Counted from the whole stretch's first letter, positions 8,305-18,904 are shown. The stretch: DNA of 63,925 nucleotides, filler included, from Octopus bimaculoides (GCF_001194135.2; 6 parts of 6 records of this genome joined end to end with filler, not necessarily neighbours in it), one strand, 5' to 3'. Program-made: numbers and translations. Notes: a model not told the origin generated them from the letters alone.

Positions 8305-10833
8305 ATGGTTCTCCTGCTAAGAACCGAATATGTTTATCCATTTACACTTTTACTAATATTGGGTACCGTGCCGTTGTCATTGGAGATTAATGTAACCAGT
8401 ATTTGTCAAACTCCTAAGAACTTCGGGAAACATAGGATTAAAACTGATTCTTATTGTCCGCGTTGTCTCACAAGAGAACGAATATTTGGCTTAAAGTGTG
8501 TTTTTCCAATTATCGATGAAGTTAACTTTTCGAACAAAATCCCAGAGTGTTTAAGACTGGTCAAACGTAAAAGAAAAAAATCGACCGATTTTTTAAATTC
8601 CTTGTATTTTTTTATAAACAGTTACGGAAAAAGCATGTTGATAAACTTGTTCCTACAAAACAATTCCAGGTATTACGAGAGATTTAAATGGGACAGTACT
8701 GAACTAGTCTTCTCAAATATTTCAAATGAAAATAATTTTATATCCAGGTATATTGTTCCACATAAAGATTCTATACTAAGATTCTTGTTCACCAATGGAA
8801 TTGAACAGATTTCTTTGTTTATCTGTCGCAAAACTTTTTCAAAAAGCATTTCTCATGTTCATTTTACCTTGGATTACAGATATTCTTGCACAGACAGAAT
8901 TTATAATTACTATGTAATGAAAACGCTTCATAGAACTGCGTTAATTTTCTCAAATCTTATGGTTGAAAATATATTTATCATAAGTTGTATCAGTATTGGT
9001 AACATCTCTAAAAAAATATGCAATCAACCGACAATGTTATTCCAGTTGCAGTGGAGAAACAGCCAGTATTTTAATATTAGTCACGTATTTCTCAATAGTT
9101 TGAATTCCTTGAAAACAGAAATATATTTTCGTGCTAAAACTACGAATTTTTCTTTAACCAAATTTTGTCTTCTACGCAACGCATCTATTCGAAAATCAGA
9201 ACTGTTAGCACATCGATTTGAGGTGACGCAGGAAAAGAGTCAGGCACCATATAGCATCGATTCTTTTGGTGTTATAAAGAACAATTCTGCTAAACAGCCA
9301 TTGTTTCTAACATCTCAATATAAACTATGGCTTCGTGGATCTAAATATAAAAAACGATTTGATAAATTAAAAAGCTTGTTAATATCCCACTCATCTACAT
9401 ACCAGCTTCCAGTTCGTAAATCTACACCCAAATCATCATTATTAACATTTAGATACGGGTCACTATCATTATTATTTAATTCAATAGAGCAAGAAAAGTG
9501 CGTTGCTGTAGTGACATACAATATTTTTCTAGAAAATTCAGCATTCATCGGAAATTATTCTAAAACTACACAAGCGTTTAGTTTTAATTTTACTTCCGAA
9601 AACTTGATAAAATCTCATTGTAATTCTTCATTCATAAGCGAAAATGCCAGCGTCAAAAGAACTCAACAGCAGACTATGAAAAAGAAATCCATGACAAATT
9701 GTGATTATTACAGTTCGCTATCTAGAAGGAAGCGAGAACTACTGCGATACAAAGGACTTCTTGCTCACGGTATATCACCGAATGCAAAGAGGCAAAATCT
9801 TTCTCCGTTAAATTATGCATCATGGAGACGGAAGTTTAACAAATTTATAGGGCATTCAGAGGTAATCCTCGGTATGGGCAATCAAGATTTAAATATGTGC
9901 AAGCAGAGTGTTAACTGTAAGCTTCCTACATGTTGGTGTTTTGGAAGAAAGCCTAGTTTTGATAGCAGGAACATACCCCAGTTCGTATATTTCACGTTCG
10001 ACGGAATTGTTGACAAGATCACCCGCAAGAAAATAGCCCAACTTTTTTCACAGGACAGAACCAACGAGAATGGGTGTCATATTCGTGCCACGATCTTTAT
10101 AACCGGTCTGGTATCAGATTACAAAGAGATTAATTGGCTCTATAAAGCTGGACATGAAATAGCATTGTATGGTCTTAGCAATGATCTTGTTGATCCCTTC
10201 ATGAAGCATCTTGAAATACCTGTTCAGAAGAAATTACTCGAACGCTATGCAGGAATCTCTGATTTATATGTAACTGGCTGGAGAAACGTCCACGACACAT
10301 CAAAATGGCATAAACAACTGGACAGTTTTAAAAAATACAATATGGTGTATGATTCTTCTATTGTAATTAGACCGTCAAGCGTCACAGAACAAGGAATATG
10401 GCCATTTACATTAGAATTTGGTTGGGATGAAAATTGCAAAAATAGCAGTTGTAGGTTCAAAACAAAGGAATCAGAAGTATTGTGGGAAATTCCTTCAATT
10501 CTTTATTCGAATTTTAAAACTTCTAAATTATGTTATTATATTGACGACTGCTTTAATGATTCCCATACATCGTTAGAAACCTATGACAACCTTGTTCGTA
10601 ATTTCTTCATTGCCCACAAATCTAAAATGCCCTTTGGTGTACGCTTGAGAAAATACTGGTTTGATAAACAAAATAAAGCGAATTTTGGGGGCCTTGATGC
10701 GTTTATAAAATTTCTGTTAGACCTCGATAATGTGTACTTAATTAGTATATCTGATCTTGTTGGATGGATGCGACATCCACAACCGATTTTTACTGAGAGA
10801 AATATCAAAAGTTTTCTTGGTATTGGATGTTAA
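8305..10833 (+). CDS. Secreted 842-aa protein: signal-like N-terminus, about 500-aa unrecognised region, and a C-terminal chitin-deacetylase-like (CE4) domain predicted to be catalytically inactive
   Basis: Uninterrupted ORF. The track starts at TTG 8251, but the first ATG is at 8305 in AAAAATGG context. It has a hydrophobic segment FTLLLILGTVPLSL. From C532 it carries animal CDA hallmarks: CKLPTCWC, PQFVYFTFDG, NENGCHIRATIF, EIAL, YDSS, IWPFTLEFG, LWEIP, PFG, DNVYLISISDLVGWMRHP. The catalytic motifs are altered: TFDD to TFDG, HxxxH to YGLSN, RxPY to RNVH, LxH to LR. Confidence 0.9.
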   Translation: MVLLLRTEYVYPFTLLLILGTVPLSLEINVTSICQTPKNFGKHRIKTDSYCPRCLTRERIFGLKCVFPIIDEVNFSNKIPECLRLVKRKRKKSTDFLNSLYFFINSYGKSMLINLFLQNNSRYYERFKWDSTELVFSNISNENNFISRYIVPHKDSILRFLFTNGIEQISLFICRKTFSKSISHVHFTLDYRYSCTDRIYNYYVMKTLHRTALIFSNLMVENIFIISCISIGNISKKICNQPTMLFQLQWRNSQYFNISHVFLNSLNSLKTEIYFRAKTTNFSLTKFCLLRNASIRKSELLAHRFEVTQEKSQAPYSIDSFGVIKNNSAKQPLFLTSQYKLWLRGSKYKKRFDKLKSLLISHSSTYQLPVRKSTPKSSLLTFRYGSLSLLFNSIEQEKCVAVVTYNIFLENSAFIGNYSKTTQAFSFNFTSENLIKSHCNSSFISENASVKRTQQQTMKKKSMTNCDYYSSLSRRKRELLRYKGLLAHGISPNAKRQNLSPLNYASWRRKFNKFIGHSEVILGMGNQDLNMCKQSVNCKLPTCWCFGRKPSFDSRNIPQFVYFTFDGIVDKITRKKIAQLFSQDRTNENGCHIRATIFITGLVSDYKEINWLYKAGHEIALYGLSNDLVDPFMKHLEIPVQKKLLERYAGISDLYVTGWRNVHDTSKWHKQLDSFKKYNMVYDSSIVIRPSSVTEQGIWPFTLEFGWDENCKNSSCRFKTKESEVLWEIPSILYSNFKTSKLCYYIDDCFNDSHTSLETYDNLVRNFFIAHKSKMPFGVRLRKYWFDKQNKANFGGLDAFIKFLLDLDNVYLISISDLVGWMRHPQPIFTERNIKSFLGIGC

Positions 10834-18500: not shown

Positions 18501-18904
18501 GTTGGAAGAAAAACTGTTTGCTACAACAGTGTCCTACTAAAAACTTTAAGGGTCTCTGGGAAGTCCCTGCTGTTCCTTATGTTGGAATTAAGAAAAGGTA
18601 TTTGTGTAAATTTGTAGACAGTTGCTATAACAAACCCCAGACTGCGGTGCAAACCTATGATCTGCTTCTAAGTAATTTCATGGCATTTTACAAAAGAGAT
18701 CGAACGCCTTTTGGTGTTCGCTTGCGATCGGACTGGTTTTTACCGAACAACGAAGAAAACCTCAAAGGTTTAAACGCTTTCCTAGGACTGGTTGAAGAAT
18801 TGTCCGATGTATACATTGTCAGTGTGAAAGGATTAATTGACTGGATGAAAGACCCGGTACTTCCTGAGCACGATAACCTTACAGCTTCAAAGATAGGCTG
18901 TTGA
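15539..18904 (+). CDS. Secreted 1121-aa double-domain chitin-deacetylase-like protein: active-type CE4 domain, S/T/N/Q stalk, basic linker, inactive-type CE4 domain
   Basis: Uninterrupted ORF with signal peptide MNFPLLFVLSLAILSASA. Domain 1 (about aa 30-343) has SFDD (D67, D68), HGINH (H123, H127), GFRSPY (R162), YDST, WEVP and PFGLNMH (H283), so all five CE4 motifs are present. Domain 2 (about aa 814-1121) has the same scaffold but TYEG, HGLKK, WRNID and PFGVRLR. Confidence 0.95.
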   Translation: MNFPLLFVLSLAILSASAVLSSIRTTPNECNKCRTASHCSLPNCSCCGHTIPGKKSQRPQLVYFSFDDAVTVRNSPLYVELFNKSRTNPNKCPIAMTLFVSHNDTDYGLVKQFYDHGMDIAVHGINHIRSLNALQFSYEALGQRLNLANRSKIPKEEIVGFRSPYLIAYGNEQFEILSKAGFAYDSTLTITKRSLIEESPVPFTMDYSWPYPCSIPECPTENIQGFWEVPIVTVLDKLARYPCVYVDGCANSPTNEEESFNFLLENFMSYYTMNKAPFGLNMHSTWLLQEYETNPYRMKAMHRFLDYILGLNDVYVVNIKQIVEWMKHQPSLNELSKFAPFQCQNQTNGYQNGTTISPEQTNNSPNQTTSSINQSSSFPNQTIVSVETISSTKLVTTVLMEEITTNAMMSQNTEENNNNDPSAKLESLQTQQVSNNFVTEGYNLQSTPAQTQPIGNSFISTREIIHSTLSPSNTTSRNKLQNISQTTLTPLNESAVTLTTSYQTSNSIPTNILHKRSLKSNNSLENRHKFEFLEVISEGSAAEENSDIKKPRSLPIQSNYNMNIQNINENDQSYIGTSRHSLQSVFHRKSNLFRVAASLVMKNDKELEMIITKDASNHDSAAILVAKNNSIDRQLLTNKDYREPVILIHNRQQKLDYENSLKKLNVVKPLTTMRNLLKSKITKICPFEKLEIPSLETVKILSPKKEAILSKKAEILPLERGQYLKAKYSDLRKTFLDFTTGINIYNRYKNKSVGQRNILPSRYTKSALLPGFVKSREFSSDPLDEHLGLSSSSSSNSSPSKSNDDSNVPVSESCQQGKNCFKPDCQCYQFHIPTTSKKIPQFVYFTYEGSVNSSITEKLKGLFHAGRLNANGCRIKSTLFVTSEGSNYTAIKELYDEGMEIALHGLKKKNLVGNLLNMEIALQKYLLNRYANVSHDKIFGWRNIDLQSKGDVQFENLQNSKMLYDSSLFVMTNLENRTGIWPSTLDFGWKKNCLLQQCPTKNFKGLWEVPAVPYVGIKKRYLCKFVDSCYNKPQTAVQTYDLLLSNFMAFYKRDRTPFGVRLRSDWFLPNNEENLKGLNAFLGLVEELSDVYIVSVKGLIDWMKDPVLPEHDNLTASKIGC
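16568..16693 (+). repeat. Six 7-aa (21-bp) coding repeats directly after the active CE4 domain
   Basis: QNQTNGY|QNGTTIS|PEQTNNS|PNQTTSS|INQSSSF|PNQTIVS. Each unit contains an N-x-S/T sequon. Confidence 0.8.

What the first reader, a model, noticed from the sequence alone, without database searches (positions are those of the whole stretch)
8305..18904. Tandem chitin-deacetylase-like cluster pairing one intact enzyme domain with two pseudo-enzyme domains
Seen: two adjacent same-strand ORFs (842 and 1121 aa), both with signal-like N-termini, together encode three CE4 domains. Only gene 2 domain 1 keeps the Asp base, the Asp-His-His metal triad, RxPY and the motif-5 His. Established: CE4 deacetylases need these residues, and typical animal CDAs have one CE4 domain, often with CBM14 and LDLa modules, which I do not see here. 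Inference: this is a secreted chitin-to-chitosan remodelling module in which dead CE4 domains replace conventional chitin-binding domains, for example in beak, radula, sucker cuticle or gut lining. I do not know of this architecture being described, but could not search.
Basis: partly seen in the sequence, partly recalled or inferred. Interest (0 to 1): 0.85.

Follow-up and report, generated by a model that had tools for sequence, protein, structure and literature searches.

The report
Octopus chitin deacetylases with dead domains
Two octopus genes encode secreted chitin-deacetylase-like proteins with one working and two inactivated enzyme domains, but this layout is an old design shared by clams, snails and cephalopods and is already in the databases, so it is ordinary for a mollusc though poorly studied.

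Summary
Window 8305-10833 (842 aa) and 15539-18904 (1121 aa) are uninterrupted same-strand ORFs that together carry three CE4/NodB chitin-deacetylase (CDA) domains. Only the N-terminal domain of gene 2 keeps the Asp base, the Asp-His-His metal triad, RxPY and the motif-5 His. Both N gaps lie between the genes.

At least 36 mollusc proteins share the layout of active domain, long disordered linker and dead domain. All dead domains form one clade (97% bootstrap). A secreted CDA-like protein with two NodB domains was already listed in the abalone shell proteome (PMC6003135). Both octopus genes are already called in GenBank.

New here:
- The dead domain is as constrained as the live one (dN/dS 0.16 against 0.13).
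- Gene 1 is an octopod paralogue of the dead-domain lineage with no recognisable catalytic domain. It has a 494-aa Octopus-only orphan region that Argonauta lacks.
- The 4.7-kb tandem spacing crosses a gap that hides at least about 16 kb, or a misjoin.

That the dead domains bind chitin remains an untested inference.

The parts
8305..10833 (+). Gene 1 CDS (842 aa plus stop): signal-like N-terminus, orphan region, dead CE4 domain
   Evidence: It is a single ORF. The full ORF is intact in O. vulgaris (tblastn, 91% identity over all 860 codons) and in a third Octopus species (P0082/L002, 78%). It is already called as an 842-aa gene in GCA_001194135.2.
8305..8394 (+). Gene 1 aa 1-30: hydrophobic, signal-like segment (MVLLLRTEYVYPFTLLLILGTVPLSLEINV)
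   Evidence: Kyte-Doolittle window means reach 2.5. The ATG and the motif (I/V)PL(S/A)(L/F)EIN are conserved in L002, O. vulgaris and Argonauta P0085. No signal-peptide predictor was run.
8395..9876 (+). Gene 1 aa 31-524: Octopus-specific orphan region, fast-evolving but kept open
   Evidence: It has 0 stops, against 20-40 in the other five frames. Under neutral substitution at 16% divergence the ORF survives in 0 of 5000 simulations. dN/dS is 0.52-0.64. It has no homologue among 1.84 billion representative proteins. It is absent from Argonauta hians P0085. It does not match CE4 profiles significantly.
9877..10830 (+). Gene 1 aa 525-842: CE4/CDA-derived pseudoenzyme domain (D566 G567 / Y622 N626 / R660 V662 H663 / R782)
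   Evidence: phmmer gives E 8e-25 to Bombyx CDA1 5zns over the full length. Motif states are. dN/dS is 0.23. It is sister to the cephalopod gene-2 d2 clade with 97% bootstrap.
12772..13680 (.). Assembly gap between the genes; synteny with the other Octopus assemblies breaks here
   Evidence: N run. O. vulgaris homology ends at 12341 and O. sinensis homology begins at 13681. The continuing flanks do not overlap each other.
14850..15002 (.). Second, small assembly gap, still upstream of gene 2
   Evidence: N run. O. sinensis aligns on both sides of it (window 14578-14779 and 15038 onwards), so this gap is locally colinear.
15539..18904 (+). Gene 2 CDS (1121 aa plus stop): mollusc-type two-domain chitin deacetylase
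   Evidence: It is a single ORF. It is 94% identical to O. sinensis LOC118766574. It is called as a 1121-aa gene in GCA_001194135.2.
15539..15604 (+). Gene 2 aa 1-22: signal peptide-like segment (MNFPLLFVLSLAILSASAVLSS)
   Evidence: GRAVY is 1.80 and hydrophobic window means reach 3.1. Not run through a predictor.
15611..16573 (+). Gene 2 d1, aa 25-345: catalytically complete CE4/NodB chitin-deacetylase domain
   Evidence: PF01522 scores 34 bits against a cutoff of 23.1. E 2.5e-54 to 5z34. D67 D68 H123 H127 R162 P164 Y165 D185 H283 are all present. AF2 pLDDT is about 80-97. dN/dS is 0.13.
16574..17956 (+). Gene 2 linker, aa 346-806: S/N/T-rich, predicted disordered, fast-evolving
   Evidence: AF2 pLDDT is below 50 over 345-649 and 663-811. 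Composition is S 14%, N 11%, T 9%, with 12 NxS/T sequons. dN/dS is 0.55. A 21-bp tandem repeat lies at 16571-16685 and is expanded in frame in O. sinensis.
17957..18901 (+). Gene 2 d2, aa 807-1121: CE4-derived pseudoenzyme domain (E848 G849 / H904 K908 / R942 I944 D945 / R1063)
   Evidence: E 2.4e-42 to 5z34. AF2 pLDDT is about 80-93, with the same order of secondary-structure elements as d1. It has 10 invariant Cys that parallel those of d1. dN/dS is 0.16. It belongs to the mollusc-wide d2 clade, 97% bootstrap.

Best explanation
Gene 2 is the Octopus bimaculoides member of a mollusc-wide family of secreted two-domain chitin deacetylases. It has four parts:
- a signal peptide;
- a catalytically complete CE4/NodB domain that should deacetylate chitin;
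- a disordered, glycosylation-sequon-rich linker of about 460 aa that evolves quickly;
- a C-terminal CE4-derived pseudoenzyme domain.

The pseudoenzyme domain has lost the metal-binding Asp, one or both metal-binding His and the catalytic His. It keeps the fold and the ten-Cys framework.

The two domains arose by an internal duplication before cephalopods, gastropods and bivalves split. The second copy was probably inactivated before that split too, because every C-terminal domain sampled except one (P0030) lacks the metal Asp.

Gene 1 is an octopod-specific paralogue descended from the dead-domain lineage. It has a signal-like N-terminus and a dead CE4 domain. Between them, in Octopus only, sits a 494-aa orphan stretch that is kept open but evolves like a linker.

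Shown: the domain content, the residue losses, the phylogeny, the selective constraint and the predicted fold of gene 2.

Inferred: secretion, and the role of the dead domains as non-catalytic chitin- or chitosan-binding or matrix-scaffolding modules. On that reading they hold the enzyme on, or organise, chitinous extracellular material. This would be the role CBM14 plays in arthropod CDAs, and it resembles GH18 'chi-lectins' that derive from dead chitinases.
For: Domain identity:
- Searches match all three domains to Bombyx CDA8/CDA1.
- Foldseek of the AF2 model gives 5zns/5z34 as top hits (TM-score on target 0.73-0.77, rmsd about 2 Å).

Residue losses: hmmalign table of 85 proteins.

Family-wide architecture:
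- 36 mollusc proteins have two domains. In 34 of them d1 is intact and d2 lacks the metal Asp and both or one His.
- NJ bootstraps: all d2 plus gene 1, 97; mollusc d1, 97; gene 1 plus cephalopod d2, 97.

Constraint:
- dN/dS is 0.13 for d1, 0.16 for d2 and 0.55 for the linker.
- For gene 1, dN/dS is 0.23 for the domain and 0.52-0.64 for the N region.
- The ORF of the gene-1 N region is maintained beyond neutral expectation.

Fold: gene 2 d1 and d2 have pLDDT 80-95 and the linker is below 50.

What d2 keeps:
- 51 columns are at least 90% conserved across d2, and 41 of them carry the same residue as in d1.
- These include the Cys framework, YD (motif 4), WPxTLDxG and GxWExP.

Extracellular matrix context: a signal-peptide protein with 2x NodB is in abalone nacre and prismatic matrix (PMC6003135), and a CDA is in Lottia shell (PMC3374290).

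Precedent for CE4 pseudoenzymes: BA3943 entries 6hm9/7bkf, BA0150 (4M1B, named a pseudoenzyme in PMC10967932) and EcCDA 2VYO.
Against: - No expression, localisation, binding or activity data exist for any member of this family in the sources I could search.
- Signal peptides were judged by hydrophobicity only.
- The AF2 model of gene 1 failed (pLDDT 27.6), so its fold rests on sequence similarity alone.
- Two existing annotations start gene 1 at internal Met codons without a signal (P0083, 599 aa; O. vulgaris P0084, 319 aa). If those starts are real the protein would not be secreted.
- Whether the dead domains bind carbohydrate rather than protein is not addressed by any result.
- Octopus has no shell, so the shell-matrix context of the relatives may not transfer.
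Confidence: 0.6

Rival explanations
1. The dead domains act through protein-protein contacts rather than carbohydrate binding. For example, they could pair with the live domain (in cis, or gene 1 in trans) to regulate it, or cross-link matrix proteins.
For: Purifying selection on d2 equals that on d1, and the whole surface framework is conserved. Both are equally compatible with a protein-binding role. The long flexible linker would allow d2 to fold back on d1. From my own knowledge, not tested here: insect CDAs are reported to need partner proteins for activity.
Against: No interface was predicted or tested. pTM is only 0.49 and no inter-domain confidence is available. The groove-lining motifs that d2 keeps (motif-3 Arg, motif-4 Asp, WPxTLDxG) fit a retained sugar groove at least as well.
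Confidence: 0.2
2. The substituted domains are still enzymes, with a non-canonical mechanism or a different substrate.
For: Most non-cephalopod d2 domains keep the motif-1 base Asp and the motif-3 Arg, and several keep the motif-5 His. Gene 2 d2 keeps one metal His (H904). Strong constraint would also fit an enzyme.
Against: The metal-binding Asp is lost in every d2 apart from P0030, whose second domain is the live one, and at least one metal His is lost too. In octopus the base is Glu (gene 2 d2), the RxPY Pro and Tyr are gone, and the catalytic His is Arg. These are the residues whose loss defines the known CE4 pseudoenzymes.
Confidence: 0.08
3. Gene 1 is a decaying duplicate (pseudogene), and only gene 2 matters.
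For: The N region has no homologues and an odd composition, with dN/dS 0.5-0.6. Annotations disagree on the start codon. Argonauta lacks the region.
Against: The ORF is intact over 842 codons in three Octopus species and over 396 codons in Argonauta. The domain has dN/dS 0.23. At 16% divergence the N-region ORF survives in 0 of 5000 neutral simulations, and only three amino-acid indels were seen in the two pairwise comparisons.
Confidence: 0.04
4. The 'tandem cluster' is an assembly artefact: the two genes are not close neighbours.
For: The window is the first 26.8 kb of scaffold CM046615.1. Synteny to O. vulgaris and O. sinensis breaks exactly at the 909-N gap, and their continuing flanks do not overlap each other. 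No gene-2 orthologue lies within 10 kb of gene 1 in O. vulgaris or Argonauta, and no gene-1 orthologue lies within 10 kb upstream of gene 2 in O. sinensis.
Against: They share a scaffold and a strand in the chromosome-level O. bimaculoides assembly. They are paralogues, which are often linked. A spacing of 16-50 kb would fit all the observations.
Confidence: 0.35

Closest known systems
Mollusc two-NodB chitin-deacetylase-like proteins. Examples: the Haliotis laevigata shell-matrix protein idb_6290 (Mann et al. 2018, PMC6003135); database entries from Haliotis, Pecten, Mizuhopecten, Sinanodonta, Potamilus, Ruditapes and Mercenaria; and Plakobranchus/Elysia 'chitin deacetylase isoform b'.
   Same: All share the layout of signal peptide, complete CE4 domain, long low-complexity linker and C-terminal CE4 domain lacking the metal Asp and His, ending in a conserved Cys. 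Both domains carry the same ten-Cys framework. Gene 2's d1 and d2 each fall in the corresponding mollusc clade.
   Different: In cephalopods the base Asp of d2 is also replaced, by Glu, and the RxPY Pro is lost. Octopus has no mineralised shell. Gene 1 has no counterpart among the non-octopod hits. The papers I could search do not discuss the second domain as a pseudoenzyme.
Bombyx mori CDA8 (PDB 5z34; from my own knowledge an insect group V, CE4-only, gut CDA) and CDA1 (5zns/5znt)
   Same: These are the best sequence and structure matches for all three domains. Like CDA8, the octopus proteins lack CBM14 and LDLa modules.
   Different: The insect enzymes have a single CE4 domain. Arthropod Cda5-type relatives place CBM14 (PF01607) and a long linker N-terminal to the CE4 domain. 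The mollusc proteins instead place a dead CE4 domain C-terminal to it.
CE4 pseudoenzymes: Bacillus anthracis BA3943 (6hm9, 7bkf) and BA0150 (4m1b), and Encephalitozoon cuniculi EcCDA (2vyo)
   Same: They have a NodB fold with catalytic or metal residues replaced and are regarded as inactive. They show that dead CE4 domains are retained in evolution.
   Different: They are bacterial or microsporidian stand-alone proteins, related only at fold level (10-12% identity). None is fused in tandem to a live copy.
GH18 chitinase-like lectins (chi-lectins such as YKL-40 and insect IDGFs). This is an analogy from my own knowledge.
   Same: A chitin-active enzyme fold lost its catalytic residues and was kept as a secreted binding protein. 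This is the mechanism proposed for the dead CE4 domains, and especially for gene 1.
   Different: They belong to an unrelated fold and family. Carbohydrate binding is demonstrated for chi-lectins but not for these domains.

Membership tests
CE4 / NodB chitin deacetylase (active enzyme) | NodB (beta/alpha) barrel fold | tested here: met
   In gene 2, both domains are modelled at pLDDT 80-95, and Foldseek's top hits are Bombyx CDAs (TM-score on target 0.73-0.77). The gene-1 domain is supported by sequence only (E 8e-25 to 5zns), because its AF2 model failed.
CE4 / NodB chitin deacetylase (active enzyme) | Motif 1 TFDD: catalytic base Asp and metal-binding Asp | tested here: met
   Met only by gene 2 d1 (FSFDDAV, D67 D68). 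Not met by gene 2 d2 (FTYEGSV) or by gene 1 (FTFDGIV).
CE4 / NodB chitin deacetylase (active enzyme) | Motif 2 H(S/T)xxH: two metal-binding His | tested here: met
   Met only by gene 2 d1 (HGINH, H123 H127). Gene 2 d2 has HGLKK, with the second His lost. Gene 1 has YGLSN, with both lost.
CE4 / NodB chitin deacetylase (active enzyme) | Motif 3 RxPY and the motif 5 catalytic His | tested here: met
   Met only by gene 2 d1 (RSPY; NMH, H283). Gene 2 d2 has RNID and RLR. Gene 1 has RNVH and RLR.
CE4 / NodB chitin deacetylase (active enzyme) | All catalytic motifs present in the two substituted domains (gene 2 d2 and the gene 1 domain) | tested here: not met
   These two domains are CE4-derived by homology but should not be filed as deacetylases.
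CE4 / NodB chitin deacetylase (active enzyme) | Pfam PF01522 above the gathering score | tested here: met
   Gene 2 scores 34 bits against a cutoff of 23.1, through d1 only. Gene 1 has no Pfam hit at E up to 1.
CE4 / NodB chitin deacetylase (active enzyme) | Metal-dependent release of acetate from chitin or chitooligomers | not testable with these tools
   Needs a biochemical assay of each recombinant domain.
Mollusc two-domain CDA family | Order of signal peptide, intact CE4, long non-conserved linker and C-terminal degenerate CE4 ending in Cys | tested here: met
   Gene 2 matches 34 of 36 two-domain mollusc proteins in order and motif states. The ten invariant Cys in each domain include the terminal C1121. 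Gene 1 meets only the dead-domain part.
Mollusc two-domain CDA family | Each domain falls in the corresponding d1 or d2 clade | tested here: met
   NJ with 100 bootstraps gives 97 for the d1 clade and 97 for d2 plus gene 1. Gene 1 is sister to cephalopod d2 at 97. The method is distance-based only; no ML tree was made.
Arthropod-type CDA groups I-IV | CBM14 (peritrophin-A) chitin-binding domain, with or without LDLa | tested here: not met
   Neither protein hits PF01607 or PF00057. The arthropod hits carry PF01607.
Tandem gene cluster | The two genes are immediate neighbours on continuous sequence | tested here: inconclusive
   They share a scaffold and strand, but across a 909-N gap where synteny to two other Octopus assemblies breaks. 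No partner lies within 10 kb in O. vulgaris, O. sinensis or Argonauta.

The most novel reading that the evidence does not exclude
The C-terminal dead CE4 domain could be an ancient, mollusc-wide carbohydrate-binding module derived from an enzyme, doing for mollusc chitin deacetylases what CBM14 does in arthropods. Octopods would then have released it as a stand-alone secreted 'CE4 lectin' (gene 1). Because octopuses have no shell, these genes would mark reuse of the shell-matrix chitin toolkit in non-mineralised chitinous structures such as the stylets, beak, radula, sucker lining or gut cuticle.
Probability: 0.3. Interest if true: 0.5.

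Novelty: new member of a known kind. Interest (0 to 1): 0.3.

Why it matters
For this locus the matter is modest. It is an ordinary representative of a mollusc gene family that is already present in genome annotations and in a shell proteome.

The family itself is under-studied. A CE4 pseudoenzyme domain has been kept next to a live one since before the cephalopod-gastropod-bivalve split, and it is under the same constraint as the live domain. 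Working out what it does (chitin or chitosan anchoring, product capture, or regulation) would inform how molluscs pattern the acetylation of chitin scaffolds in shell and other hard tissues. It would also add an animal example to the short list of CE4 pseudoenzymes.

The octopod-only gene 1 offers a natural 'dead domain alone' experiment.

The work also corrects three annotations:
- Gene 1 is truncated in the O. vulgaris annotation.
- Gene 1 is also truncated in a 599-aa model (P0083) of the same locus as this window.
- An in-frame repeat in gene 2 is probably wrongly spliced out in the O. sinensis model.

Tried and rejected
1. I tested whether the gene-1 N region (aa 31-524) is a decayed copy of the live CE4 domain plus linker.
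   - There are colinear echoes: FTLDYRYSC against PFTMDYSWPYPC at nearly the same offset, and NFISRY against GFRSPY.
   - There is a weak BLAST hit of the signal and Cys region (E 0.03).
   - None of the statistical tests is significant: hhalign probability below 1%; global-alignment z 2.3 with the signal segment and 0.5 without it; and an hmmsearch score reached by about 7% of shuffles.
   - A full HMMER scan of 1.84 billion representatives found nothing real.
   - The idea is neither supported nor excluded.

2. AF2 of gene 1 with a four-sequence alignment gave pLDDT 27.6, so it was not used.

3. The gene-1 pseudogene idea was rejected on dN/dS and ORF maintenance.

4. A search for further CE4 copies or exons in the window found none.

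5. I tried to confirm the gene 1-gene 2 adjacency through the O. sinensis, O. vulgaris and Argonauta loci. No partner lies within 10 kb in any of them.

6. Literature searches for octopus or cephalopod CDA, and for tandem or inactive CE4 in molluscs, found nothing beyond table entries.

7. Cluster look-up to name the unnamed cephalopod-like and bivalve-like hits (P0003, P0004, P0016, P0030) returned no names.

Full report
**What is in the sequence**

The window is the first 26.8 kb of Octopus bimaculoides chromosome scaffold CM046615.1 (GCA_001194135.2); record and window coordinates coincide.

Two long same-strand ORFs are present:
- Gene 1: ATG 8305 to the stop at 10831-10833, 842 aa. The open frame reaches back to 8251.
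- Gene 2: 15539-18904, 1121 aa.

The N runs at 12772-13680 and 14850-15002 both lie in the intergenic stretch. Neither ORF depends on continuity across a gap. Both genes are already called with these lengths in that assembly.

**Domains**

| Domain | Best PDB match | E-value |
|---|---|---|
| Gene 2 aa 37-333 | Bombyx mori CDA8, 5z34 | 2.5e-54 |
| Gene 2 aa 37-333 | Bombyx mori CDA1, 5zns | 6.4e-51 |
| Gene 2 C-terminal 321 aa | 5z34 | 2.4e-42 |
| Gene 1 C-terminal 322 aa | 5zns | 8e-25 |

- Gene 1's domain is 39% identical to gene 2's second domain (E 3e-72) and 28% identical to its first.
- tblastn finds no other copy in the window.
- Pfam detects only gene 2's first domain (PF01522, 34 bits against a cutoff of 23.1). 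It finds no CBM14 or LDLa module.
- An hmmalign of all domains gives these motif states:

| Domain | Motif 1 | Motif 2 | Motif 3 | Motif 5 |
|---|---|---|---|---|
| Gene 2 d1 | FDD | HGINH | RSPY | NMH |
| Gene 2 d2 | YEG | HGLKK | RNID | RLR |
| Gene 1 domain | FDG | YGLSN | RNVH | RLR |

**The architecture is not special to octopus**

A search with gene 2 returned 81 proteins. jackhmmer and hmmalign show that 36 mollusc proteins carry two CDA domains:
- Cephalopod-like: P0001-P0004.
- Bivalves: Sinanodonta, Potamilus, Ruditapes, Pecten, Mizuhopecten, Mercenaria.
- Gastropods: Haliotis, Babylonia, Nucella, Plakobranchus, Elysia.

In 34 of them the first domain keeps D-D/H-H/R-P-[YFN]/H. The second lacks the metal Asp (usually Gly), the metal His pair and usually the motif-5 His. 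There are two exceptions. In P0030 the first domain is the degenerate one and the second is live. In Nucella P0052 both are dead.

A neighbour-joining tree with 100 bootstraps gives:
- All second domains plus the gene-1 domain form one clade (97).
- All mollusc first domains form another (97).
- The two together are set apart from the arthropod, nematode and fungal CDAs sampled (97).

The internal duplication therefore predates the cephalopod-gastropod-bivalve split, and the shared loss of the metal Asp suggests that inactivation of the second copy does too.

Mann et al. [quoted passage not shown] A CDA is a minor secreted protein of the Lottia shell (PMC3374290).

I found no paper that discusses the second domain as a pseudoenzyme, and none on cephalopod CDAs. 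The library searched is open-access only.

**The dead domain is maintained, not decaying**

dN/dS values:

| Region | Compared with | dN/dS |
|---|---|---|
| Gene 2 d1 | O. sinensis | 0.13 |
| Gene 2 linker | O. sinensis | 0.55 |
| Gene 2 d2 | O. sinensis | 0.16 |
| Gene 1 domain | O. vulgaris | 0.23 |
| Gene 1 domain | third Octopus (L002) | 0.23 |

- AF2 with a 28-sequence alignment models both gene 2 domains at pLDDT about 80-95, with the same order of secondary-structure elements. The 460-aa linker is below 50.
- Foldseek's best hits are the Bombyx CDAs (TM-score on target 0.73-0.77, rmsd about 2 Å).
- Ten Cys are invariant in each domain at equivalent positions.
- Of the 51 columns that are at least 90% conserved among dead domains, 41 carry the same residue as in live domains. 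These include the motif-4 YD, WPxTLDxG and GxWExP. FDDA, HSxxH, WRSP and NMH are not retained at that level.
- The linker is S/N/T-rich with 12 NxS/T sequons. It contains a 21-bp repeat that is expanded in frame in O. sinensis.

**Gene 1**

Its domain clade (O. bimaculoides, O. vulgaris, a third Octopus and Argonauta hians) is sister to the cephalopod gene-2 second-domain clade (97% bootstrap). Gene 1 is therefore a cephalopod-lineage paralogue of the dead-domain lineage.

The full ORF is intact in O. vulgaris: a single tblastn HSP covers all 860 codons at 91% identity. NCBI nevertheless annotates only 319 aa there, as 'chitin deacetylase 7-like' (P0084). The ORF is also intact in L002. A conserved ATG and hydrophobic segment are present in all of these species.

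Argonauta's protein (P0085, 396 aa, one ORF) has the same signal-like start. About 60 residues later comes the dead domain, so it lacks the roughly 440 aa that Octopus carries.

The Octopus N region (aa 31-524) has these properties:
- It is kept open: 0 stops against 20-40 in the other frames, and 0 of 5000 neutral simulations at 16% divergence stay open.
- It evolves like a linker, with dN/dS 0.52-0.64.
- It has no homologue among 1.84 billion representative proteins. The one weak hit is an FkbM methyltransferase repeat protein, which is chance.

Whether this region is the decayed remnant of the live domain plus linker cannot be decided. Colinear motif echoes exist, but every statistical test was non-significant, and AF2 on the shallow alignment failed.

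**Adjacency**

- Window 3743-12341 aligns to the O. vulgaris gene-1 locus.
- Window 13681-20003 aligns to the O. sinensis gene-2 locus.
- The 7.9 kb that follow in O. vulgaris and the 8.3 kb that precede in O. sinensis match neither the window nor each other.
- Argonauta has no gene-2-like ORF within 10 kb of gene 1.

The 909-N gap therefore hides at least about 16 kb, or it is a misjoin at a scaffold end. 'Tandem cluster' remains unproven. Adjacency of gene 2 to the downstream WD40 gene is conserved.

**Mechanism and comparison**

Shown:
- Gene 2 has one complete CE4 active site and one fold-preserving, residue-dead copy under equal constraint.
- Gene 1 carries only the dead type.

Inferred:
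- Both proteins are secreted.
- The live domain deacetylates chitin.
- The dead domains act as non-catalytic chitin or chitosan binders or matrix scaffolds. This would be analogous to CBM14 in arthropod CDAs and to chi-lectins derived from GH18 chitinases.

Rivals are a protein-interaction or regulatory role for the dead domains, residual non-canonical catalysis, and gene 1 being a pseudogene (largely excluded).

CE4 pseudoenzymes are known in bacteria and microsporidia: BA3943, BA0150 and EcCDA. The concept is therefore not new. The tandem live-plus-dead arrangement conserved across a phylum is a variation that has not been characterised functionally.

**Verdict**

The novelty is overstated and the adjacency is uncertain. 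Interest is low to moderate. The locus is an ordinary member of an existing but under-studied mollusc family, and gene 1 is a small octopod-specific twist.

Noticed in passing
L001 about 11000-11600 (O. sinensis gene 2 linker); window 16571-16685: The 21-bp repeat in the linker is expanded in frame in O. sinensis into many copies of SSFPNQTTSSINQ. The ORF there is continuous for 1296 codons, yet the NCBI model (1116 aa) removes the expansion as an intron. That intron is probably an annotation artefact.
   Followed up: partly
L003 8438-10960 (O. vulgaris); window 8305-10833: Annotations of gene 1 disagree. O. vulgaris has a 319-aa 'chitin deacetylase 7-like' that starts at an internal Met. A 599-aa model (P0083) exists for this window. 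GCA_001194135.2 has an 842-aa model. The full ORF, with a conserved ATG and a signal-like start, is intact in all the Octopus species examined.
   Followed up: yes
window 1-26814: Window coordinates equal record coordinates of CM046615.1, so the locus sits at the extreme start of a 58-Mb chromosome scaffold. Joins are least reliable there. In O. vulgaris, gene 1 lies at about 0.85 Mb of a 78-Mb chromosome. In O. sinensis, gene 2 lies at 42.5 Mb of 59.5 Mb.
   Followed up: partly
window 20227-26814, minus strand: A multi-exon WD40 beta-propeller gene (774-826 aa product) lies downstream of gene 2 and runs off the window. The same neighbour follows gene 2 in O. sinensis.
   Followed up: no
P0030 and P0052 (proteins): These two are exceptions to the live-then-dead order. 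P0030 (671 aa, very short linker, 502 cluster members) has a degenerate first domain and an intact second one. Nucella P0052 has both domains dead, next to a normal paralogue (P0032) on the same contig.
   Followed up: no
L004 3169-4449 and 12214-13596 (Argonauta hians): Long low-complexity ORFs (His/Gln-rich, poly-Val, Pro/Leu-rich) flank the Argonauta gene-1 orthologue. They look like translated microsatellite or simple-repeat DNA rather than genes.
   Followed up: no
P0004 and P0016 clusters: Many independent Logan run assemblies give contigs of about 3.3-6 kb that each carry a full two-domain CDA (87 contigs for one cephalopod-like member; 787 members for P0016). This pattern is what transcript assemblies would give and hints that these genes are well expressed. 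The run types could not be checked.
   Followed up: no
window 1547-1619, 2411-2554, 7519-7609, 20399-20464, 26555-26686 and others: Microsatellites are dense throughout the window (ATC, TG, GA, ACT, AC). Several directly abut the N gaps, which probably explains why the assembly broke there.
   Followed up: no
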